NCBI RefSeq assembly: GCF_006345805.1
Contig: NW_021824918.1
Location: forward strand, 1-17,166
Direction of reading: 5' to 3'
Source of the DNA: Octopus sinensis
Taxonomy: Eukaryota
DNA length: 17,166 bases
Below, in pieces: positions 148 through 16,519 of this stretch. The translations under genes and the position numbers were made by a program. The notes under the pieces were generated by a model, which made no database searches, had not been told where the DNA came from, and was given only the letters and a program-made list of their open reading frames with translations. The first letter of the stretch is position 1. Every line of letters starts with the position of its first letter.

Positions 148-699
148 TATGTTGGGAATGCTAGAAGCACCACGACGGAAGTCGAAATATGCGAGCCAAG
201 TGCCGTTGAAAATATGCTTGGTGACGTGAAGAAGAACCGACGCAAAAACAACCCACAACACCACAAGTACCACCACCACCAGCACCACCACCGTCACCTC
301 CAACATCAACAGCATCATGAGAACGTCTACTGCTCCCTGCTGCCACCACTACAAATTACAAAATAAGAAACATTGTAAGTTACAGCCAGCCGCCCTTTAA
401 GTCATATTCAAGCTTATTTTAAAACTTCTCAGAAAGGCAACACAGAATAACGATTAAAAAGAAAAAAAACATGTTAAAACAAAACAAAAAATAAAATAAA
501 CCCCAATTAGCCAGAAGTATGCAGAGTTTCGCGCCTAAAAGACATTATGGGTACCGCCTCTGCTTCTGCTATATGGGTGGTTTGTCAGGAACGTTGATAC
601 CCCGTCTCTGCAATGTCTATTTTCGCGAGGCGAGGTTTTGCAATAATATTTTTATTTGAAACGTTTTTGAAAAAAAAAATTAAGTTTTAACTTTGCTGA

Positions 700-843
700 T
701 AAGTAGCTTGTTTACCAACCACATGGTTCCGGGTTCAGTCCCACTGCGTGGCACCTTGGGCAAGTGTCTTCTACTATAGCCTCGGGCCGATCAAAGCCTT
801 GTGAGTGGATTTGGTAGACGGAAACAGAATAAGCCCGTTCGTA

Positions 844-887
<44 letters not shown>

Positions 888-1118
888 TATGTGTGTGTAT
901 ATTTGTGTGGTCTGTGTTTGTCCCCCTAGCATTGCTTGACAACCGATGCTGGTGTGTTTATGTCCCCGTTACATTGCGGTTCGGCAAAAGAGACCGATAG
1001 AATAAGTACTGGGCTTACAAAAAAATAGGTCCCGGGGTCGAGTTGCTCGATTAAAGGCGGTGCTCCAACATGGCCGCAGTCAAATGACTGAAACAAGTAA
1101 AAGAGTAAAGAGTAAAAG
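700..1118 (+). mobile_element. tRNA-derived CORE-type SINE, 'family A' (octopus-like), head slightly 5'-eroded
   Basis: B-box GGTTCAGTCCC (732-742), CORE-like CCTTGGGCAAGTGTC, internal (TA)n, 3' tail (AGTAAAAG)n. Near-identical to copies at 11908-12313, 13752-14152 and 16115-16519. Confidence 0.9.
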
Positions 1119-1408
1119 GGTATGAAATCCATTGTTCTTGTTGTTACTGTTACTGTTTAAGGAGCAGATTGTCCCAGGCCTCTCTGATTTAGTTGCGAGA
1201 CTTAAATCCGGCCCTGTGTTTAGCTTGTCATAATTTTTATTGGGTATTTGTTGAAAATTTCTTTAAAAAGTATCCATTTTCCTGAAAGATACGATGCAAA
1301 AAAGTCGGTCGATTTCGTGCGATTTCGTTTATAATAGTCTAGAGAGGAACACATCTGCATTGTTTTTCATTGACGCTCCAGGTGGAACAGAAAGACATTA
1401 CTGATAAA

Positions 1409-3410: not shown

Positions 3411-3764
3411 GACAGGGTTTGGGGGAGAGACATGGAAATGGATGAGGTGGAAGAAAGACTGAATAAGAAAAACACAAAACTTAGAAAACCAAAACAGAGA
3501 GAGAAAAAAAAAAACATGTCCGTCAATAAAACACAGAACGCGAATTTAAAACGTATGGGATCTATTTATAGAAAGCGCTGGCCAGAATATTAAATAGCTT
3601 GAATGTCTGGTAGAGTAAGAAATCTGTCATAAACAACCAGAGAAACAACACCCACTGTAAGATTACAACTGGTAGCAATCTGATAAATTTTGAGTCTCAT
3701 TGGATTACACACCCTCTAATACCCACACATACATGGATATATACAAGTGTGGTTTTATTTAAAC

Positions 3765-3886: not shown

Positions 3887-4125
3887 ATAAATAAATAAAT
3901 AAATATATATATATACATATATATATATATAATATGTATGTATATTTATATACGTGTGTGTGTGTGTGTGTACACACTCATATATGTTGAAATACATTGA
4001 TGGCTAAAACGAAAGGACACCCGAAAATATAATCACTTCCCACAAATTAGTGCGTGTGTGTATGTGTGTGTAGGTGTGTATATATATATATATATATGTA
4101 TTTAATATGTATATATATATATGTA

Positions 4126-4195: not shown

Positions 4196-4662
4196 TGAAA
4201 CATACAAGATAAATTCTTGATTTACTGAAGTTATTTCTACTTCCAGAGAGAGAGAGAAAGAGCAGACCAACTTTTGGGTGGCAATTAGTACCAACTTTAA
4301 GGAGATTAAAAAATAGTTTTAGGAATCAAAATTTTGTCAAAACTAACATGCCATTGTGGAAAACATTTTGATTGTTTGGACAGGACAGCTACAGACATGT
4401 GTTTTTGCTTAAATGGTATCGTCTGCACCGCTATTATTTCCCCTTATATCTACACTAGACCAGACATTTATCTCTGGCCTACGGAATTTGCATAAATGAA
4501 ATGATAATAAGCTAGGGGAAATACAGCCGAGAGCCTTACGACTTGAATTTGAAGAAGAAAAACATATAATTTTATATTAAATAAGATCCAAGATAATTTC
4601 TTTATTTATTGAAATTATTTCTACTTCCAGAGAGGACAAACCAAGTGCTTGGTAGTAATAAT

Positions 4663-4880
4663 CTTTTATCTTTAATATGTTTCAGTCATTAGACTGCAAC
4701 CATACTGGGGCACCACCTTAAAACAATTTTTAGTCGAATAAATTGACACCAGTACTTATTTATTTTAAAGCCTGATATCTGTTTCATCAGTACCTTTTGC
4801 CGAATCGCTAAGTTACGAGGATGTAAACGTATCAAAGCCGGTTGTCAAGTGATGATGTTGAACAGACACAGACACAAAGT
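4663..4880 (-). mobile_element. Diverged 3' half of a family A SINE
   Basis: tttcagtcattagactgc...ccagtacttat...ttttgccgaatcgctaagttacg...ggttgtcaag aligns with gaps to 13775-13960. Confidence 0.8.
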
Positions 4881-5343
4881 CATATACGGATACAGCCATG
4901 TAACCACACACCTGCTTTTCTCCTACTTTTCTTTTGCTTCTCACGAAGACGAAGAGCTTTGCTCGAAACGACACACTTCTTTTTTCCATCTTAAACCGAA
5001 CGTCAACTTAATACATTCGCTGACTTTTGTTTTTATTTTCGATTTACCTATATCTATTTATCTATCAATCTCTCTATTTATCTATCTATCTACACACACA
5101 TATACATGTCTTTTACTGGTTATAATTTGTACAGTCGTTACTGTCCTGTTTTTGTTACGATTTTTTACCCCTCTGCGAAAAGATCTCAGAATTTTAATTG
5201 ATTTGCTTTTCGCAGGAAGGAAAGTTTCTTGTCGAAGATACGTCTCGCTTTTATCCATCGAAACATAGAGTAGATGAAACCTTTAGCGACTGAAGAAGGG
5301 TTTTTTTCTTTGTGTTAATTGTCCTGTACTCTATTTTTTTGCT

Positions 5344-5705
5344 GTTTTTAAAAAAAATGTCCAGTTCCTTTGGTTTGTGTCTATGTTTTCGTTTCTCATT
5401 GTGTTCGAAGTCCTTTTGGTGCCCTGTACTCATATATGCGTGTATATGTACATGTAGAGGTAGGTACGTACATATATGTTTATATATATGCATATGTTTT
5501 ATTTTATTTATTATTTTATTTATTAATATATATATATATATATATTTTTGTTTAAAAAAATGTCCAGTTCCTTTGGTTTGCGTCTATGTTTTCGTTTCTC
5601 ATTGTGTTCGACGTCCTTTTGGTGTCCTGTACTCATATATGCGTGTATATGTACATGTAGAGGTAGGTAGTACATATATGTTTATATATATATGCATATG
5701 TTTTA

Positions 5706-5716
<11 letters not shown>
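5344..5716. repeat. Local tandem duplication (~170-bp units, period ~203 bp) separated by (AT)n
   Basis: tgtccagttcctttggtttg... at 5358 and 5561. Only a few substitutions or indels between copies. Confidence 0.92.
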
Positions 5717-5764
<48 letters not shown>

Positions 5765-5777
5765 TACACACACATAC

Positions 5778-5818
<41 letters not shown>

Positions 5819-5819
<1 letters not shown>

Positions 5820-5965
5820 GCGTAACTTGTACGAAATTTATCGACCCCGAAAGGATGAAAGGCAAAGTAGACCTCGGCGGAATTTGAACTCAGAACGCAA
5901 CGGCAGACGAAATACGGCTACGCATTTCGCCCTGCGTGCTAACGTTTCTGCCAGCACGCCGCCTT
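5819..5965 (-). mobile_element. tRNA-derived SINE 'family B', monomer with tail lost into (TA)n
   Basis: Minus strand starts AAGGCGGCGTGCTGGCAGAAACG (A-box-like), then GAGTTCAAATTCC (B-box), then the GTCTACTTTGCCTTTCATCCTTTCGGGGTCGATAAA domain. Matches 10075-10201. Confidence 0.9.
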
Positions 5966-6174
5966 GTATCACAGGAGATTTTCTTTAAGAAGACAGTTTC
6001 ACAACCTCCATTGTTTTACACATGCACTCACGCCCCCCCCATTAAACTGATAAGAACAAGAATGTTATTACGTACAAATGTCCACTGTCTCAATGTTTCT
6101 TCTCTACAAGATTTTGCTAAGCTTGGTTAGCTTTTAAACTACCTTTATCGTCTTGTTCAAATCTTCTGAAGAAT

Positions 6175-6426
6175 GGGTATATATATATATACTCTGGGTG
6201 TTTTTGTGCATATATGTAAATGGACATGTGTGCGTATGCAGGCATATGCATATGTATACGTATATGCATGCACACACACACAGACACACACACATCTAAA
6301 CGCATATACATACATACATACATTTACATATATGCAAAGAAACGAATGTTTGTGTGTGCATGTTTTGTACGGTGTATATATATTGATATATATATATATT
6401 ATATATATATATATATTAATATGATA

Positions 6427-6469
<43 letters not shown>

Positions 6470-6525
6470 ATATAATATATAATATATATATATATATCAA
6501 TATAATATATATATATATATATATA

Positions 6526-6568
<43 letters not shown>

Positions 6569-6606
6569 TATATATATATATATATATAATATATATATAT
6601 ATATCA

Positions 6607-6637
<31 letters not shown>

Positions 6638-6673
6638 TATATATATATATTATATATATATATATATATAATG

Positions 6674-6707
<34 letters not shown>

Positions 6708-6713
6708 TATATA

Positions 6714-6756
<43 letters not shown>

Positions 6757-6895
6757 CTTTACACAAACACTTTTAAATAGGCACATTAATAAATATCTAC
6801 ATAGACATTTAGATGTGATTTATGTGTGTACGTGTGTATATATATGTATATCTGTGGGTGTTTGTAAAAGAGAAAGGCAGGGAGAGAATGGGGAA

Positions 6896-6932
<37 letters not shown>

Positions 6933-7010
6933 GAGACAGAGAAAGAGGGAAGAGAAACTTGTGTTGTGCCTCTGTGTGTGTGTATATTTTGTTTCGAGGT
7001 GTTTATATAT

Positions 7011-7045
<35 letters not shown>
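6175..7045. repeat. Compound (TA)n/(CA)n/(GA)n tract, including a ~390-bp interrupted (TA)n
   Basis: Direct reading. Confidence 0.95.
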
Positions 7046-7156
7046 ATGAGAAAATAGTTGGACATCACCCCTAACACTCTCTCTATATATAAATTAACAG
7101 AATGAGATAAAAAAATCCAAGGCTGTGAATATTTTAAGAACATTTATGAAGAAAAG

Positions 7157-9417: not shown

Positions 9418-10201
9418 GTTTCTTTATTGCCCACAAGGGACTAAACATAGAGGGGACAAACAAGGACAGACATAGGTATTAAGTCGATTACATCGACCCC
9501 AGTGCGGAACTGGTACTTAATTTATCGACCTCGAAAGGATGAAAGGCAAAGTCGACCTCGGCGGAATTTGAACTCACAACGTAACGACAGACGAAATACG
9601 TATTTCTTTATTACCCACAAGGGGCTAAACATAGAGGGGATAGACAAGGACAGACAAACGAATTAAGTCGATTACATCGACCCCAGTGCGTAACTGGTAC
9701 TTTATTTATCGACCTCGAAAGGATGAAAGGCAAAGTCGACCTCGGCAGAATTTGAACTCACAACGTAACGACAGACGAAATACGTATTTCTTTATTACCC
9801 ACAAGGGGCTAAACACAGAGAGGACAAACAAGGACAGACAAACGGATTAAGTCGATTACATCGACCCTAGTGCGTAACTGGTACTTTATTTATCGACCTC
9901 GAAAGGATGAAAGGCAAAGTCGAACTCGGCAGAATTTAAACTCACAACGTAACGACAAACGAAATACGTATTTCTTTATTACCCACAAGGGGCTAAACAC
10001 AGAGGGGACAAACAAGGACATACATAGGTATTAAGTCGATTACATCGACCCTAGTGCGTAACTGGTACTTTATTTATCGACCTCGAAAGGATGAAAGGCA
10101 AAGTCGACCTCGGCAGAATTTGAACTCACAACGTAACGACAGACGAAATACGGCTAAGCATTTCGCCCGGCGTGCTAACGTTTCTGCCAGCTCGCCGCCT
10201 T
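9418..10201 (-). mobile_element. Family B SINE tetramer: one tRNA-like head plus four ~184-bp bodies
   Basis: GAAATAC recurs at 9593, 9777, 9961 and 10145 (period 184). Head at 10152-10201. Flanked by direct repeat AGATACAAAGTATA at 9404-9417 and 10202-10215. Confidence 0.93.
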
Positions 10202-10540
10202 AGATACAAAGTATAATCATACATTCCGTCGTGAGGAAAATTATGAACCATTTCCACAAAATATTCTACTACATGCAAATGATGAAAAATTATTTCGACA
10301 GCGGCTAATGAGAATGCCAGATACATTTCGGCCTTCTTCACTGTTTCCTAAATCGAAGCCATAAATTTCGTCTAAGCATGCGACTGCTATTGCATGTCAC
10401 TGACAAGGTCCAGGAAAGCTGCTTGTCGGTTTTTCGTCTCCTACTGATATATATTGTTTTTAACACAGCACGTCTAAAAGAAATTTTCAAAAGGAAGGAA
10501 ATCTAGTACCACCTTCAATTATTGAAAAACAAGCTGCCTA

Positions 10541-10700
10541 CACAATCACTTAGGAGATATTGATTTCTTCGATGACATTGTCTGTCTCTCCTAGTGCCAC
10601 ATTGACATGGAGGAGAAGTCACAGCAATGAAAGTAACATACATGCAAGTTGACCTGAAATTCAACATCAGGAAAGCAAAATGCATGAGAGTGGGTGTGAC
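10541..10700 (+). pseudogene. Decayed reverse-transcriptase fragment of an RTE-clade LINE
   Basis: Translates as HNHLGDIDFFDDIVCLS*CHIDMEEKSQQ / (frameshift) KVTYMQVDLKFNIRKAKCMRVG. This matches the RTE pattern L.DLDFADD..LLS....DMQ.K...L......GL.IN..KTK.M, with [F/Y]xDD at 10565-10576. A weaker upstream match (HVTDKVQESCLSVF ~ V.TGVRQGC.LS.F) starts near 10393. Confidence 0.72.
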
Positions 10701-10705
10701 CAACC

Positions 10706-10817
10706 GCGTCCCCAAAGTCCACCCCCTCCTCACCGTGGTGGGGACGCTGGCAACGGGTAGCGTCAGAGCTATGCCGTCGGGAACTTCGCTTCCTTGTAGG
10801 GCTACCCAAGGCGGACT
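10706..10817 (+). ncRNA. HDV-like ribozyme candidate, probably inactivated
   Basis: P1 GCGTCCC(CA) 10706-14 / (TG)GGGACGC 10739-47. P2 AGTCC(ACC) 10716-23 / (GGC)GGACT 10810-17. L3-like TCCTCACC 10727-34. GG-CAAC after P1. P4 GGGTAGC 10755-61 / GCTACCC 10801-07. P3 and J4/2 are imperfect. Confidence 0.55.
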
Positions 10818-11092
10818 GGTCTGATACCGAGTGGTATTAGGGCCACAACCTGGTGAAAATCCTTCGACAACCGGCGGATCTTCGGTCGTTCTGCCCTTGC
10901 GTCTGCGGACAATCTGCGGCAAACAGGATGTCTCTACATGCGGGATTGTTGGGGACCGCTTATCAAATCCACATATTCCCACGAAACTTCTTCCATGAAT
11001 TCTCAATGGCGAATACAATGCCTCGAGGGTGGTGGAAGAAGCCGACTCAACCCGCCCAGGGGGAATGTCGCCACAAGTACAAGTAAGTAAGT
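10706..11092 (+). mobile_element. Short GC-rich non-autonomous retroposon-like unit with RTE-type tail
   Basis: GC-rich, hairpin-rich segment ending in ACAAGTACAAGTAAGTAAGT (11073-11092). No tRNA A/B boxes and no convincing ORF. Confidence 0.5.
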
Positions 11093-11093
11093 G

Positions 11094-11345
11094 CATGTCA
11101 GTTTCACAGACCTCAATCGAAGGAGAGGGGCTTTCTCCGTCCGGGTTGCGGATCCGTGAATTAAGCTGCCGGACGAGATAGTGAAGATGCCGACGACCTC
11201 TCGGTTCAAAGACTCTCTTGACCAGAAATGGCCTGAACTCTTTGCATGAACACCCTCCCTGTACATAACTTCATGTCCCCCTACATGGCTTTGCTTCTGC
11301 TTTTTGTGCCAAGAAATTAACAAATTAACAAATAAGAAACAAAAC
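11094..11345 (+). mobile_element. 3' end of a CR1-clade LINE (ORF2 C-terminus plus 3' UTR)
   Basis: Frame 11094-11249 reads HVSFTDLNRRRGAFSVRVADP*IKLPDEIVKMPTTSRFKDSLDQKWPELFA*, matching the CR1 motif RR.FFS.RV...WN.LP..VV......FK..LD..W. 3' hairpin CATGT/ACATG and 8-bp repeat (AAATTAAC)2 at 11314-11329. Confidence 0.8.
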
Positions 11346-11498
11346 AAAGAGATGGGAAGCGATGACAATAACGGGGTGGGCTGAAAAGATCAGAACATCA
11401 AAGCAAGGATTGGGGAAAGCAACAGTTGCCTTCAGGATGCTTAGACCTGTCTAAAGATCAGAGACCCTGTTAACAAACTCAAGACTATCTTTACACAA

Positions 11499-11646
11499 TT
11501 CAAAGGGCCAACCTTGTCATATTCTGTGTTACATTGACAATCCCTGAACATCACGTTAAGGGTAAGCGTGTATGTGGAGTACTTACGTACTTGCACGTTA
11601 ACTTTACGCCCCTGCTGTTCTGTTGATTGTAACCAAGGGAATGCCG
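11499..11646 (+). mobile_element. Diverged SINE 3' domain ('family D')
   Basis: ccttgtcatattctgtgttacattgacaatccctgaacatcacgtt aligns with ccttgttacattgtgcatcacactgaatctccctgagaaattcgtt at 16070-16115. Confidence 0.6.
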
Positions 11647-11665
11647 TTTGTTACATACATAAATT

Positions 11666-11907
11666 AAAGACCCTCTTCGGTCGTGAATGACCATGGGATT
11701 GCACCTAGAAAGTCCCTTCCGAAGCACAAGTCCGGGCAAGGTTGTTTGGGGAAGACCAGAAATCGCCCATACATAGCAATCTCCCTTCTCCAGGCCACCG
11801 ATGTTGTCCAAGGGAAAGACAAAGGGGCCGATACAGCTTGGCACCAGGGACGTCGCAACTCATTTCTACAGTGGAATAAACTGAATCAACGTGAAATGAA
11901 GTGTCTT
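11666..11907 (-). mobile_element. Body of a CORE-type SINE ('family C'), interrupted by a family A SINE
   Basis: Minus strand begins aagacacttcatttcacgttgattcagtttattccactgtagaaatgag, homologous to aagacactttacttcacgtttttccaggccactcagctgg at 15995-16035. Its head lies at 12327-12391. Confidence 0.7.
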
Positions 11908-12313
11908 CCTCTTTTACTCTGTTACTTGTTTCAGTCATTTGACTGCGGCCATGCTGGAGCACCGCCTTTAGTCGAGCAACTCGACCCCGGGACTTATTCT
12001 TTGTAAGCCCAGTACTTATTCTATCGGTCTCTTTTCCCGAACCGCTAAGTGACGGGGACGTAAACATACCAGCATCGGTTGTCGAGCAATGCTAGGGGGA
12101 CAAACACTGACTCACAAACACATACACACACATACATATATATATATATATACATATATACGACAGGCTTCTTTCAGTTTCCGTCTACCAAATCCACTCA
12201 CAAGGCATTGGTCGATCCGAGGCTATAGCAGAAGACACTTGCCCAAGATGCCACGCAGTGGGACTGAACCCGGAACCATGTGGTTGGTTAGCAAGCTACT
12301 TACCACACAGCCA
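11908..12313 (-). mobile_element. Family A SINE, full length
   Basis: A-box TGGCTGTGTGG (12313-12303), B-box GGTTCAGTCCC, CORE-like segment, (TA)n/(TG)n linker and AGTAAAAGAG tail. Confidence 0.92.
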
Positions 12314-13751: not shown

Positions 13752-13964
13752 CTTTACTCTTTTACTCTTTTACTTGTTTCAGTCATTTGACTGCGGCCAT
13801 GCTGGAGCACCGCCTTTTAGTCGAGCAAATCGACCCCGGGACTTATTCTTTTGTAAGCCCAGTACTTATTCTATCGGTCTCTTTTGCCGAACCGCTAAGT
13901 TACGGGGACGTAAACACACCAGCATCGGTTGTCAAGCAATGCTAGGGGGACAAACACAGACACA

Positions 13965-14014
<50 letters not shown>

Positions 14015-14152
14015 CATATATACGACAGGCTTCTTTCAGTTTCCGTCTACCAAATCCACTCCCAAGGCATTAGTCGGCCCGGGGCTATAGCAGAAGACAC
14101 TTGCCCAAGATGCCACGCAGTGGGACTGAACCCGGAACCATGTGGTTGGTTA
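13752..14152 (-). mobile_element. Family A SINE, 5'-truncated head
   Basis: Near-identical to 11908-12290. Ends before the A-box. Confidence 0.92.
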
Positions 14153-14319
14153 ACTAAATAAAGTGGAGTCCTTCAACCTTCACGTATTTGACCATGGCTG
14201 AGAGAGAGAGAGAGGAAGAGAGGGGGAGATATTGAACTGGGGTTTTAAGAAGAGAAGGAGACAGAAGAAGAAGAAAAGAAGAAGAAGAACAACAACAATA
14301 ACAACTGACCTTAATAGGA

Positions 14320-14872: not shown

Positions 14873-15294
14873 ATTTTTTTTTACTACCCACAAGGGGCTA
14901 AACACAGAGGGGACAAACAAGGACAGACAAACGGATTAAGTCGATTATATCGACCGACCGCAGTGCGTAACTGATACTTATTTAATCGACCCCAAAAAGA
15001 TGAAAGGGAAAGTCGACCTCGGCGGAATTTGAATTCAGAACGTAGCAGCAGACGAAATACCTATTTCTTTACTACCCACAAGGGGCTAAACACAGAGAGG
15101 ACAAACAAGGACAGACAAACGGATTAAGTCGATTACATCGACCCCAGTGCGTCACTGGTACTTATTTAATCGACACCGAAAGGATGAAAGCAAAGTCGAC
15201 CTCGGCGGAATTTGAACTCAGAACGTAGGTGGCAGACGAAATACCGCTAAGCATTTCGCCCGGTGTGCTAACGTTTCTGCCAACTTGCCGCCTT
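14873..15294 (-). mobile_element. Family B SINE dimer: one head plus two bodies
   Basis: GAAATAC at 15054 and 15238 (period 184). Junction GAAATAC-CTATTTC. Head at 15245-15294. Confidence 0.9.
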
Positions 15295-16114: not shown

Positions 16115-16519
16115 TGGCTGTGTGGTAAGTAGCTTGCTTACCAACCACATGGTTCTGGGTTCAGTCCCACTGCGTGGCACCTTGGGCAAGTGTCTTCTGC
16201 TATAGCCTCGGGCCGACCAAAGCCTTGGGAGTGAATTTGGTAGACGGAAACTGAAAGAAGCCCGTCATATATATGTATATATATATATGTATGTGTGTGC
16301 ATGTATATGTTTGTGTGTCTGTGTTTGTGCCCCCCAACATCACTTGACAACCGATGCTGGTGTGTTTACATCCCCGTAACATAGTGGTTCGGCAAAAGAG
16401 ACCGATAGAATAAGTACTGGGCTTACAAAGAATAAGTCCTGGGGTCGATTTGCTCGACTAAAGGCGGTGCTCTAGCATGGCCGCAGTCAAATGACTTAAA
16501 CAAGTAAAAGAGCAAAGAG
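16115..16519 (+). mobile_element. Family A SINE, full length
   Basis: A-box TGGCTGTGTGG at 16115, B-box GGTTCAGTCCC, CORE-like segment and AGTAAAAGAG tail. Confidence 0.92.

What the first reader, a model, noticed from the sequence alone, without database searches (positions are those of the whole stretch)
10706..10817. HDV-like self-cleaving ribozyme fold, starting at the G where an RTE RT fragment breaks off
SEEN: three strong helices nest in HDV order. P1 is G10706CGTCCC/GGGACGC10747 (extendable to 9 bp). P2 is AGTCC/GGACT (8 bp with one A-C if extended). P4 is GGGTAGC/GCTACCC, enclosing GGAA-cTTCGc-TTCC. There is an L3-like TCCTCACC with the CC able to pair with GG10749-50 (P1.1), and GG-CAAC follows P1. 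Both anomalous A's (10721, 10732) follow a C, as expected from CpG decay; restoring them gives a perfect P2 and L3 UCCUCGCC. KNOWN: genomic HDV has L3 UCCUCGCU and GGGCAAC after P1, and HDV-like ribozymes occur at 5' ends of RTE, R2 and L1Tc retrotransposons. CAVEAT: P3 has a C-U mismatch or ambiguous register. J4/2 is either a short C10807-A-A or GGC lacking the usual NAA. This copy may be dead.
Basis: partly seen in the sequence, partly recalled or inferred. Interest (0 to 1): 0.8.

Follow-up and report, generated by a model that had tools for sequence, protein, structure and literature searches.

The report
Decayed HDV-like ribozyme heading a retroposon
The stretch is most likely a damaged copy of a self-cutting RNA (an HDV-like ribozyme) at the very front of a short RTE-derived jumping element that landed inside an older RTE; this arrangement is already known, and this copy is probably no longer active.

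Summary
On their own they are no better than chance. The published HDV-like descriptor does not match. The relaxed version needed to admit this site hits about once per 8 kb. A three-helix nest appears in 4-17% of shuffles. Rfam gives 15.9 bits against a threshold of 44.

Context and homology rescue part of the idea. The old RTE reverse-transcriptase frame stops at about 10705 and resumes at about 11346, so 10706-11345 is an insertion. Its first base is the first base of P1.

A covariance model was built only from a canonical HDV-like ribozyme about 210 nt upstream of the endonuclease ORF of an apparently intact RTE (L129). It finds 10707-10786 at 23.3 bits (E about 5e-5). The best score in 1.4 Mb of control DNA was 14.8 bits.

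A second full-length RTE (L131, bounded by a 13-nt target-site duplication) shares 10735-10824 (E 0.002).

This copy has a broken P3 pair, an A at a P1.1-forming position in L3, and no secure J4/2 or P2. Verdict: a relic of a known kind of ribozyme, probably inactive.

The parts
10430..10705 (+). 5' part of an old, frameshifted RTE-clade reverse-transcriptase fragment (the host element). By eye it reaches back to about 10213.
   Evidence: tblastn of 120 RTE proteins matches 10430-10675. An RTE profile HMM matches positions 405-462. Motifs DIDFFDD and DLKFNIRKAKCM were read.
10706..11092 (+). Most likely extent of the ribozyme-led, internally deleted RTE-derived retroposon (about 387 bp).
   Evidence: The 5' end coincides with the end of RT homology and the start of P1. 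The 3' end is the only (AAGT)3 in the window. This is the same tail type as RTEs L129 and L131. No target-site duplication was found.
10706..10713 (+). P1 5' strand, GCGUCCCC. G10706 is the predicted +1 nucleotide, with cleavage 5' of it.
   Evidence: It pairs with 10740-10747 in 8 Watson-Crick pairs. Against L129, G10708-C10745 replaces C-G, a compensatory change.
10727..10739 (+). P3 (U10727 C C / G10737 G U, with U x U broken) enclosing L3, UCACCGU 10730-10736.
   Evidence: This register is given by Rfam RF02682, MAFFT and R1. C10729-G10737 is compensatory against the G-C pair in L129. A10732 sits where the descriptor requires a pyrimidine (a C in L129).
10740..10750 (+). P1 3' strand GGGGACGC, then a spacer U10748, then G10749 G10750 (the P1.1 partners).
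   Evidence: In the R1 alignment the model's G+1 falls on C10707, G10706 lies outside the match, and C10747-U10748 are an insertion against L129.
10762..10825 (+). Three-way-junction domain in the position of an enlarged P4. Outer stem 10762-67 / 10820-25, inner stem 10774-78 / 10810-14, hairpins 10779-83 / 10790-94 and 10799-801 / 10805-07.
Evidence: nhmmer with L131 against the window gives 10735-10824, E 0.0019. RNAalifold gives 24 pairs, 6 of them compensatory.
10755..10807 (+). It is present but is an alternative that is not conserved in L131.
10806..10817 (+). C10806-C-A-A fits the CNRA pattern. GGCGGACU pairs with 10716-10723 with one mismatch.
   Evidence: It competes with the conserved inner stem 10774-78 / 10810-14, and the P2 5' strand is separated from P3 by 3 nt.
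10827..10834 (+). Alternative J4/2 (C10827-C-G-A) plus a 4-bp P2 3' strand, GUGG. It pairs with CCAC 10719-22, or with CCCC 10723-26 with one mismatch.
   Evidence: Read. It is unsupported by any comparison. In the MFE, C10827 and C10828 are paired.
11081..11092 (+). (AAGT)3, an RTE-type microsatellite tail.
   Evidence: It is the only exact copy in the window. 0.15 matches with up to one mismatch are expected by chance. L131 ends in (AAGT)n immediately before its target-site duplication, and L129 ends in AAGTCAAGTAAGTCA.
11093..11345 (+). Unexplained 253-bp segment ending in an A-rich run (AAATTAACAAATTAACAAATAAGAAACAAAACAAAG). It is either a second insertion or the 3' part of the same element.
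   Evidence: There is no homology to any fetched locus and no RT homology.
11346..11880 (+). The old RTE reverse transcriptase resumes (KEMGS..IKARIG..VAFRMLRPV.. through GKTKGP).
   Evidence: HMM positions 488-529 match 11385-11505. tblastn matches 11362-11502. With 10705-11345 removed, the stitched RT aligns across the junction at 41 bits. About 16-22 residues of RT are missing.

Best explanation
The region 10706-10817 is the 5'-terminal part of a short, internally deleted RTE-lineage retroposon. The functional unit probably runs on to about 10830-10840. The retroposon spans 10706 to about 11092, possibly to 11345, and inserted in sense orientation into an older, decayed RTE reverse-transcriptase gene.

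Its first ~50 nt descend from an HDV-like self-cleaving ribozyme of the kind that sits at the extreme 5' end of autonomous RTE elements.

Inferred mechanism, from what is known of R2, L1Tc, baggins and RTE ribozymes: these elements lack their own promoter, so a master copy is transcribed as part of a longer read-through RNA. The double-pseudoknot ribozyme cuts 5' of its own first G. The released RNA, beginning at G+1, is reverse-transcribed at a new site. Full-length copies therefore begin exactly at the first base of P1, as this one does.

What is shown here is the insertion, the position of its 5' end, and the homology. Cleavage is inferred and was not tested.

This particular copy carries lesions in the catalytic core:
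- a U x U mismatch in P3;
- an A in place of a P1.1-forming C in L3;
- an extra base pair and a 1-nt spacer at the base of P1;
- no secure J4/2 or P2.

It is most likely an inactive relic.
For: 1. Insertion. RT homology to an RTE profile runs to about 10705 and resumes at about 11346-11385. The RT with the insert removed aligns across the junction at 41 bits. GC content jumps from 0.38 to 0.64 at 10706.
2. Homology. L129 is an RTE with an apparently intact endonuclease ORF (4269-4922) and RT ORF (5114-7153). At 3986-4057 it has a motif that passes the strict P1/P3/L3 core of the published descriptor and scores 27 bits against RF02682. It has G+1 paired with U, a 7-bp P1, P3 ACG/CGU, L3 UCCUCGU, GG, and GGCUAA.
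3. Model R1, made from that sequence alone, finds window 10707-10786 at 23.3 bits, E about 5e-5. The next hit in the window scores 4.3 bits.
4. Controls for R1. The best score was 14.3 bits in 345 kb of RTE loci. It was 12.5 bits in 582 kb of loci that all share the window's 17-mer. It was 14.8 bits in 501 kb of loci chosen to share a 14-16-mer with the model.
5. Compensatory changes against L129. In P1, C-G becomes G10708-C10745. In P3, G-C becomes C10729-G10737.
6. L131 is a full-length RTE bounded by a 13-nt target-site duplication. It begins within 2 nt of the 5' strand of a P1-like helix, GCCU(U)CCUC / GAGGAGGC. It is homologous to window 10735-10824 (E 0.0019).
7. An (AAGT)n tail of the same type as in L129 and L131 lies 375 nt downstream, on the same strand.
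8. The paradigm is established in the literature. HDV-like ribozymes are described at the 5' ends of R2, L1Tc, baggins and RTE elements (PMC6765202).
Against: - This copy fails the published descriptor. It needs about 7-8 relaxations, at which point the descriptor is non-specific.
- Rfam gives 15.9 bits against a gathering score of 44.
- Only two relatives could be fetched, and neither has been tested for cleavage.
- L131, the closer relative for the 3' half, has no canonical L3 or P3.
- L129's own P2 is only 4 bp.
- The 3' half (P4, J4/2, P2) has at least three incompatible readings. In the thermodynamically best fold, candidate catalytic cytosines C10827 and C10828 are paired.
- No target-site duplication flanks the window's insert.
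- 253 bp of the insert are unexplained.
- No other copy of the element could be retrieved, so neither a shared 5' end nor family-wide covariation could be checked.
Confidence: 0.6

Rival explanations
1. It is a conserved, structured 5' UTR of an RTE lineage whose role is not self-cleavage, for example binding the element's own protein, internal translation initiation or promoter activity. On this reading the HDV-like appearance of this copy is incidental.
For: The best-supported conserved structure is a nested three-way domain shared with L131. L131 lacks a canonical L3/P3 yet is a full-length element. The window copy fails the descriptor.
Against: L129 has a complete canonical core and a GGCUAA J4/2 at the same place in its 5' UTR. 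The window matches that core specifically. The two roles are not exclusive: R2 ribozymes are reported to serve in both cleavage and translation (PMC6765202).
Confidence: 0.17
2. It is a chance fold in a GC-rich stretch of a transposon. On this reading the resemblance to L129 is a compositional coincidence, and nothing ribozyme-like was ever here.
For: The helix nest occurs in 4-17% of shuffles. The relaxed descriptor hits about once per 8 kb. The MFE z-score is -0.09. R1 also gave an 11-bit false positive inside an ORF1-like coding region of L161.
Against: The 23.3-bit score is 8.5 bits above the best of 1.4 Mb of controls, two sets of which were biased in favour of matching. The match starts at the insert's first bases. 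There is independent homology to L131, and an RTE-type tail lies downstream.
Confidence: 0.12
3. This very copy is a still-active, non-canonical HDV-like ribozyme. It would have an 8-bp P1, a G-C closing pair, a 2-bp P3 and a large P4.
For: P1 is perfect. GG follows P1. Two CNRA-type candidates exist (C10806-CAA and C10827-CGA), each followed by a strand that can pair upstream of P3. Natural ribozymes tolerate imperfections; this is shown for twister in PMC11662667 (title and abstract only).
Against: One of the two P1.1 pairs is lost and a P3 pair is broken. Both sit in the part of the fold that the published descriptor constrains most tightly. Competing local structure is more stable. There is no comparative support for any P2.
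Confidence: 0.08
4. The region is simply the continuation of RT coding sequence (the ORF 10627-10824 stays open), or a fragment of another retroelement protein.
For: The frame of the RT fragment runs without a stop to 10824.
Against: The RTE profile stops aligning at about hmm position 462, near 10705-10710. The next ~16-22 profile positions are absent rather than diverged. Pfam finds nothing in any frame of 10700-11950. There are no endonuclease or C-terminal relics. RT homology resumes only after 11346.
Confidence: 0.02

Closest known systems
HDV-like self-cleaving ribozymes at the 5' ends of RTE, baggins, R2 and L1Tc non-LTR retrotransposons (Webb 2009 and Ruminski 2011 as reviewed in PMC6765202; R2: PMC3774820; L1Tc: PMC3185411)
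   Same: It sits at the first nucleotide of a non-LTR retroelement. P1 begins with G. The order is P1 - P3/L3 - P1' - GG. It has a large P4 region, as in R2. The presumed role is to release the element RNA from a read-through transcript.
   Different: This copy has a broken P3 pair, an A at a P1.1-forming L3 position, an 8-bp P1 closed by G-C with a 1-nt spacer before GG, and no secure J4/2 or P2. The carrier is a ~390-bp non-coding derivative, not an autonomous element.
L129 ribozyme: 3986-4057 of NCBI GCA_029980105.1, contig JARPNA010000175.1, ~210 nt upstream of the endonuclease ORF of an apparently intact RTE
   Same: 34 of 48 aligned positions are identical. The J1/2 AAAG.CCA.CCC, the L3 frame, the GG.AAC after P1, and an (AAGT)n-type tail on the element are shared. 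R1 scores 23.3 bits.
   Different: L129 is compact (72 nt, short P4) and canonical in its core. The window has a ~70-nt three-way insertion in the P4 position and carries core lesions.
Rfam RF02682, HDV ribozyme from Faecalibacterium prausnitzii
   Same: It is the only Rfam family to touch the site. The hit starts at 10706 and uses the same arrangement: P1, one spacer nucleotide, GG, CAAC.
   Different: 15.9 bits against a gathering score of 44. RF02682 is a bacterial family with a different context. The model cannot represent the P2 and P1.1 pseudoknots.
Twister-type ribozymes at the 5' ends of non-LTR retrotransposons (Schistosoma mansoni, PMC8501958)
   Same: Same logic of 5' processing by a self-cleaving RNA. 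An RTE fetched here (L196) has a twister-P1-like hit upstream of its RT.
   Different: It is a different ribozyme fold. There is no twister signal in the window.

Membership tests
HDV-like ribozyme (published descriptor, RNArobo suppl. Fig S11-S14, PMC4870747) | P1 of 6-7 bp that starts with G (+1) and closes on a pyrimidine | tested here: met
   G10706...C10747. There are 7 Watson-Crick pairs plus an eighth, C10713-G10740. The closing pair is G-C rather than the usual G-U, which the descriptor allows.
HDV-like ribozyme (published descriptor) | P3 of 3 Watson-Crick pairs whose 3' strand abuts the P1 3' strand | tested here: not met
In the homology register, U10727 x U10739 is broken while C-G and C-G are kept.
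HDV-like ribozyme (published descriptor) | L3 = U-Y-Y-H-C-G-(N)-Y | tested here: not met
UCACCGU matches 6 of 7 positions, with A10732 at a Y position.
HDV-like ribozyme | P1.1: two L3 cytosines pair with the two purines that follow P1 | tested here: inconclusive
   GG is present at 10749-50 but after a spacer, U10748. In the homology register only C10731 can pair.
HDV-like ribozyme (published descriptor) | J4/2 = C-N-R-A(-N), holding the catalytic C, directly before the P2 3' strand | tested here: inconclusive
   There are two candidates, C10806-C-A-A and C10827-C-G-A. Neither has comparative support. The stretch that might correspond to L129's GGCUAAC holds no C, but that correspondence is not significant.
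HDV-like ribozyme (published descriptor) | P2 pseudoknot of at least 6 bp, with its 5' strand contiguous with P3 | tested here: not met
   10716-23 / 10810-17 is 8 bp with 1 mismatch, but it is 3 nt away from P3. Its 3' strand is claimed by a conserved local helix. The alternatives are only 3-4 bp.
HDV-like ribozyme | Scores at or above the gathering threshold of a curated Rfam HDV-type family | tested here: not met
   No match at gathering thresholds. The best is RF02682 at 15.9 bits against 44.
HDV-like ribozyme | Site-specific, Mg2+-dependent self-cleavage 5' of G+1 that is abolished by mutating the J4/2 cytosine | not testable with these tools
   This needs an in vitro transcription and cleavage assay.
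Retrotransposon-borne HDV-like ribozymes (RTE/R2/L1Tc type) | The ribozyme's +1 nucleotide coincides with the 5' end of a non-LTR retroelement | tested here: met
   RT homology of the interrupted host element ends at about 10700-10710, and P1 starts at 10706. The related L131 element starts at its P1-like helix, as shown by its target-site duplication.
Retrotransposon-borne HDV-like ribozymes (RTE/R2/L1Tc type) | Sequence-plus-structure homology to a canonical member | tested here: met
   R1 was built from L129 only. It scores 23.3 bits, E about 5e-5, while controls scored at most 14.8 bits in 1.4 Mb.
Retrotransposon-borne HDV-like ribozymes (RTE/R2/L1Tc type) | Many genomic copies share the same 5' end and show covariation in all helices | not tested
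   No cephalopod or other source genome is reachable with these tools. All attempts to find copies failed.
RTE-clade non-LTR retrotransposon (the interrupted host element) | RT domain homologous to RTE reverse transcriptases | tested here: met
   The stitched fragment scores 41 bits against a profile of 80 RTE proteins. tblastn hits lie on both sides of the insert. Pfam alone does not detect it.
Non-autonomous RTE derivative (the insert) | 5' UTR and 3' tail of an RTE, no coding capacity, flanking target-site duplication | tested here: inconclusive
   5' UTR homology is met. An (AAGT)3 tail is met. There is no coding relic. No target-site duplication was found and the 3' boundary is ambiguous.

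The most novel reading that the evidence does not exclude
They would consist of little more than an RTE 5' UTR with an HDV-like ribozyme and an (AAGT)n tail. The ribozyme lineage would carry a conserved three-way-junction domain in place of P4 and would be shared with RTEs of other marine invertebrates. The family consensus would still be catalytically active. That would make it a ribozyme-headed, SINE-like parasite of RTE.
Probability: 0.25. Interest if true: 0.45.

Novelty: new member of a known kind. Interest (0 to 1): 0.3.

Why it matters
If the family consensus proves active, it would add a lophotrochozoan, possibly cephalopod, lineage to the known retrotransposon HDV-like ribozymes. It would carry an unusual conserved three-way domain in the P4 position. 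It would also show that a ~390-bp non-coding derivative can ride on RTE machinery using the same 5' self-processing.

That bears on how RTE elements, which are abundant and reportedly transcribed in octopus brain (PMC9115989), define their RNA 5' ends without a promoter of their own.

As it stands, this is a single decayed copy of a known kind of element. It is useful mainly as an annotation, and as a lesson that descriptor-style helix spotting in GC-rich DNA is not evidence by itself.

Tried and rejected
**Searches for more copies, all unsuccessful**
- The antisense 193-aa ORF across the site gave no hits in the protein collection.
- A stitched RT fragment gave no hits.
- A 64-aa RT piece searched against 1.8 billion representatives gave only a low-complexity false hit.
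- Ten window ORFs are not in the collection by exact look-up.
- A 17-mer scan of metagenome and viral contigs gave only chance matches.
- The Octopus vulgaris transcriptome supplement held as text has no match.
- There is no second copy inside the window.
- A viral-contig scan for RTE found nothing.
- A 14-16-mer scan of viral contigs gave chance hits only.
- Model R2 (window plus L131 domain) found no further members.
- Further RTE loci (L128, L130, L194-L197 and 60 others) have no HDV-like core.

**Alternative readings tested and rejected**
- RT coding continues through the site. Rejected.
- ORF1-like coding, suggested by an 11-bit R1 hit in L161. That hit lies in a coding region and is a false positive, and Pfam finds no such domain in the window.
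- A retropseudogene of a known structured RNA or tRNA. Nothing was found.
- 'Model B': GGUAUU-AGGG at 10833-10842 as the homologue of L129's GGCUAAC-AGGG, which would mean a lost catalytic C. The similarity is not significant: 157 of 1000 shuffles reach it.
- L177 4676-4758 as another member. It has a 7-bp P1 with G-U but no canonical P3/L3, so it was not used.
- A C-terminal RT coding relic in 10850-11100. There is no consistent hit.

Full report
**1. The observation**

- GCGUCCC 10706-12 pairs with GGGACGC 10741-47. The helix can extend by C10713-G10740 and A10714-U10739.
- AGUCC 10716-20 pairs with GGACU 10813-17. Extended to 10723/10810 it is 8 bp with an A10721 x C10812 mismatch.
- GGGUAGC 10755-61 pairs with GCUACCC 10801-07, around a GGAA/UUCC hairpin.
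- UCCUCACC lies at 10727-34, and U-GG-CAAC follows P1.

As a fold alone this is not beyond chance.
- Rfam at gathering thresholds finds nothing in the window.
- A permissive scan gives only RF02682 (the F. prausnitzii HDV-type ribozyme) at 15.9 bits against a threshold of 44, E 2.2. It does start exactly at 10706.
- The nested MFE is no better than shuffles, z = -0.09.
- I took the published HDV-like descriptors from the RNArobo supplement (PMC4870747) and implemented them. The strict forms give no hit on either strand.
- Admitting the candidate needs roughly 7-8 relaxations.
- A core relaxed just enough (P1 of 7-8 bp, one P3 mismatch, one L3 mismatch) hits 5 times in the window and 97 times in 753 kb of other DNA.
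- A P1>=7 / P2>=5 / P4>=7 nest in HDV order appears in 4.3% of dinucleotide shuffles of the 112 nt when P1 is at the start, and in 17% anywhere.

**2. Context: the site is the 5' end of an insertion**

The window is repeat-rich eukaryotic DNA with microsatellites, a 184-bp tandem array and several copies of a SINE-like repeat.

Upstream of 10706, in three shifting frames, lie RTE-type RT motifs. Pfam does not see them.

I fetched 120 real RTE proteins using a consensus-like query.
- tblastn places RT homology at 10430-10675 and again at 11362-11502.
- A profile of 80 of these proteins gives hmm 405-443 matching 10538-10654, and hmm 496-529 matching 11404-11505.
- With 10705-11345 removed, the stitched RT aligns through the junction: hmm 409-529, 41 bits. 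With the candidate region left in frame, the alignment stops at hmm 462, at about 10705-10710.

It also resumes about 640 bp later, with about 16-22 residues lost. The region 10706-11345 is therefore an insert. GC content jumps from 0.38 to 0.64 at its first base.

**3. Relatives**

No cephalopod genome is reachable with these tools, and all attempts to find more copies failed (see Tried and rejected). RTE-bearing contigs in public assemblies were informative.

*L129.* This is NCBI GCA_029980105.1, contig JARPNA010000175.1, and it carries an RTE with an apparently intact endonuclease ORF (4269-4922) and RT ORF (5114-7153). At 3986-4057, about 210 nt before the first ORF, Rfam RF02682 scores 27 bits. 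It is the only sequence among 66 RTE loci (345 kb) that passes the strict P1/P3/L3 core. Its features are:
- P1 GCCUCCC / GGGAGGU, with G+1 paired to U;
- P3 ACG / CGU;
- L3 UCCUCGU;
- GG after P1, a short P4, GGCUAAC, and a 4-bp P2.

MAFFT aligns it to window 10706-10757 with 34 of 48 positions identical.

A covariance model built from L129 alone (R1) was searched without filters over the whole window. It gives 10707-10786 at 23.3 bits, E about 5e-5. The runner-up scores 4.3 bits. Controls for R1:
- best non-self score of 14.3 bits in 345 kb of RTE loci;
- 12.5 bits in 582 kb of metagenome loci that all contain the window's own 17-mer GGGACGCTGGCAACGGG;
- 14.8 bits in 501 kb of loci chosen because they share a 14-16-mer with the model.

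Extrapolating from these controls gives about the same expectation as the reported E-value. The 5' half of the candidate is therefore homologous to a canonical-looking RTE ribozyme.

*L131.* This contig from a host-contaminated MAG carries a full-length RTE bounded by an exact 13-nt target-site duplication, ATACCTTGAAGGC, at 194-206 and 3449-3461. It ends in (AAGT)n. The element begins within 2 nt of G205, the first base of a P1-like helix GCCU(U)CCUC / GAGGAGGC. nhmmer with L131 190-420 finds window 10735-10824 at E 0.0019. L131 has no canonical L3 or P3.

**4. What the relatives say about the fold**

Rfam, MAFFT and R1 agree on one register.
- P1 is 10706-13 / 10740-47. It is 8 bp, with G10708-C10745 compensatory to the C-G pair in L129.
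- P3 is U10727-C-C / G10737-G-U. The pair U x U is broken, and C10729-G10737 is compensatory to the G-C pair in L129.
- L3 is UCACCGU, 10730-36.
- A spacer U10748 follows, then G10749-G10750, then CAAC.

- A10721 aligns with an A in L129, so it is not a CpG-decay product.
- A10732 aligns with a C of L3 that should form P1.1, not with the G.

For the 3' half, RNAalifold on the window plus L131 gives a nested three-way domain:
- outer stem 10762-67 / 10820-25;
- inner stem 10774-78 / 10810-14;
- two hairpins;
- 24 pairs in total, 6 of them compensatory.

In the window alone the domain is also more stable, -21.6 against -14.5 kcal/mol. With only two sequences, this is suggestive rather than proof.

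Three closings of the pseudoknot remain possible.
- C10827-CGA plus GUGG 10831-34.
- A UAUU-AGGG site at 10835-42, whose resemblance to L129 is not significant.

None has comparative support.

**5. The element**

The only (AAGT)3 in the window lies at 11081-11092 on the same strand. By chance, 0.15 matches (allowing one mismatch) are expected. L129 and L131 end in the same kind of tail.

The ribozyme-led unit is therefore most likely 10706-11092, about 387 bp. It has no coding relics, so it looks like an internally deleted, non-autonomous RTE derivative.

The segment 11093-11345, which ends in an A-rich run, is unexplained. It could be a second insertion or the rest of the same element. No target-site duplication was found.

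**6. Mechanism and verdict**

*Shown here:* the insertion, the coincidence of its 5' end with P1, the homology to a canonical RTE 5' ribozyme, and the lesions in this copy.

*Inferred from the established biology of R2, L1Tc, baggins and RTE ribozymes (PMC6765202; PMC3774820; PMC3185411):* a master copy is co-transcribed with upstream sequence. The ribozyme cuts 5' of G+1. The released RNA is then copied into new sites, so full-length copies start at G+1.

This copy is most likely inactive. It has a broken P3 pair, has lost one P1.1 pair, has a spacer at the base of P1, and has no secure J4/2 or P2.

My estimates:
- about 0.6 that this is a relic of an HDV-like ribozyme heading an RTE-derived retroposon;
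- about 0.08 that this very copy still cleaves.

The kind of thing is already known, so the novelty is 'new member of a known kind' and the interest is modest.

**7. Note on method**

I used Rfam models, the published degenerate descriptor, and retrotransposon relatives instead.

Noticed in passing
L196:208-262 (+), TARA metagenome scaffold ERZ28653657 scaffold_29454: A twister-P1-like ribozyme hit (RF03160, 37.5 bits against gathering 67.2, E 1.2e-4) lies about 1 kb upstream of an RTE RT ORF. This suggests that some RTEs use twister rather than HDV-like ribozymes at the 5' end, as reported for Schistosoma non-LTR elements.
   Followed up: no
L131:194-206 and 3449-3461: An exact 13-nt target-site duplication, ATACCTTGAAGGC, bounds a full-length RTE with an (AAGT)n tail. 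Its 5' end falls at a P1-like helix, but the interior lacks a canonical L3/P3.
   Followed up: partly
window 11093-11345: A 253-bp segment sits between the (AAGT)3 tail and the point where the old RT resumes. It ends in AAATTAACAAATTAACAAATAAGAAACAAAACAAAG and has no homology to anything fetched. It may be a second small retroposon.
   Followed up: partly
window 9419-10270; also 5819-5965 and 14880-15294: A 184-bp tandem repeat (3-4 units at 93-95% identity) abuts the 5' side of the old RT fragment, and related units occur elsewhere in the window.
   Followed up: no
window 697-1132 (-), 11913-12313 (+), 13816-14154 (+), 16115-16516 (-): There are four copies of a ~400-bp SINE-like repeat at 84-95% identity, each with an internal (TA)/(CA) microsatellite. 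One abuts the 3' end of the old RTE.
   Followed up: no
window 14397-14356 (-): This is the only strict hit of the P1/P3/L3 core descriptor in the window. It is AT-rich, rich in G-U pairs, and has no supporting context, so I take it as a chance match. It illustrates the descriptor's false-positive rate.
   Followed up: partly
L130-L193 (genome contigs): 64 contigs filed under bacterial or archaeal assemblies encode RTE reverse transcriptases. About 20 come from a single Metamycoplasmataceae MAG (CBDHHR01), and others from endosymbiont MAGs of the snail Alviniconcha. They are evidently host eukaryotic contamination.
   Followed up: no
L161:282-370 (+): An 11-bit R1 hit falls inside an ORF1-like coding region (…HRLNAKPNSPVVARCTFFKDKVKILKAKRKL…). 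It is a reminder that C-rich-then-G-rich coding DNA can mimic the P1/L3 region.
   Followed up: yes
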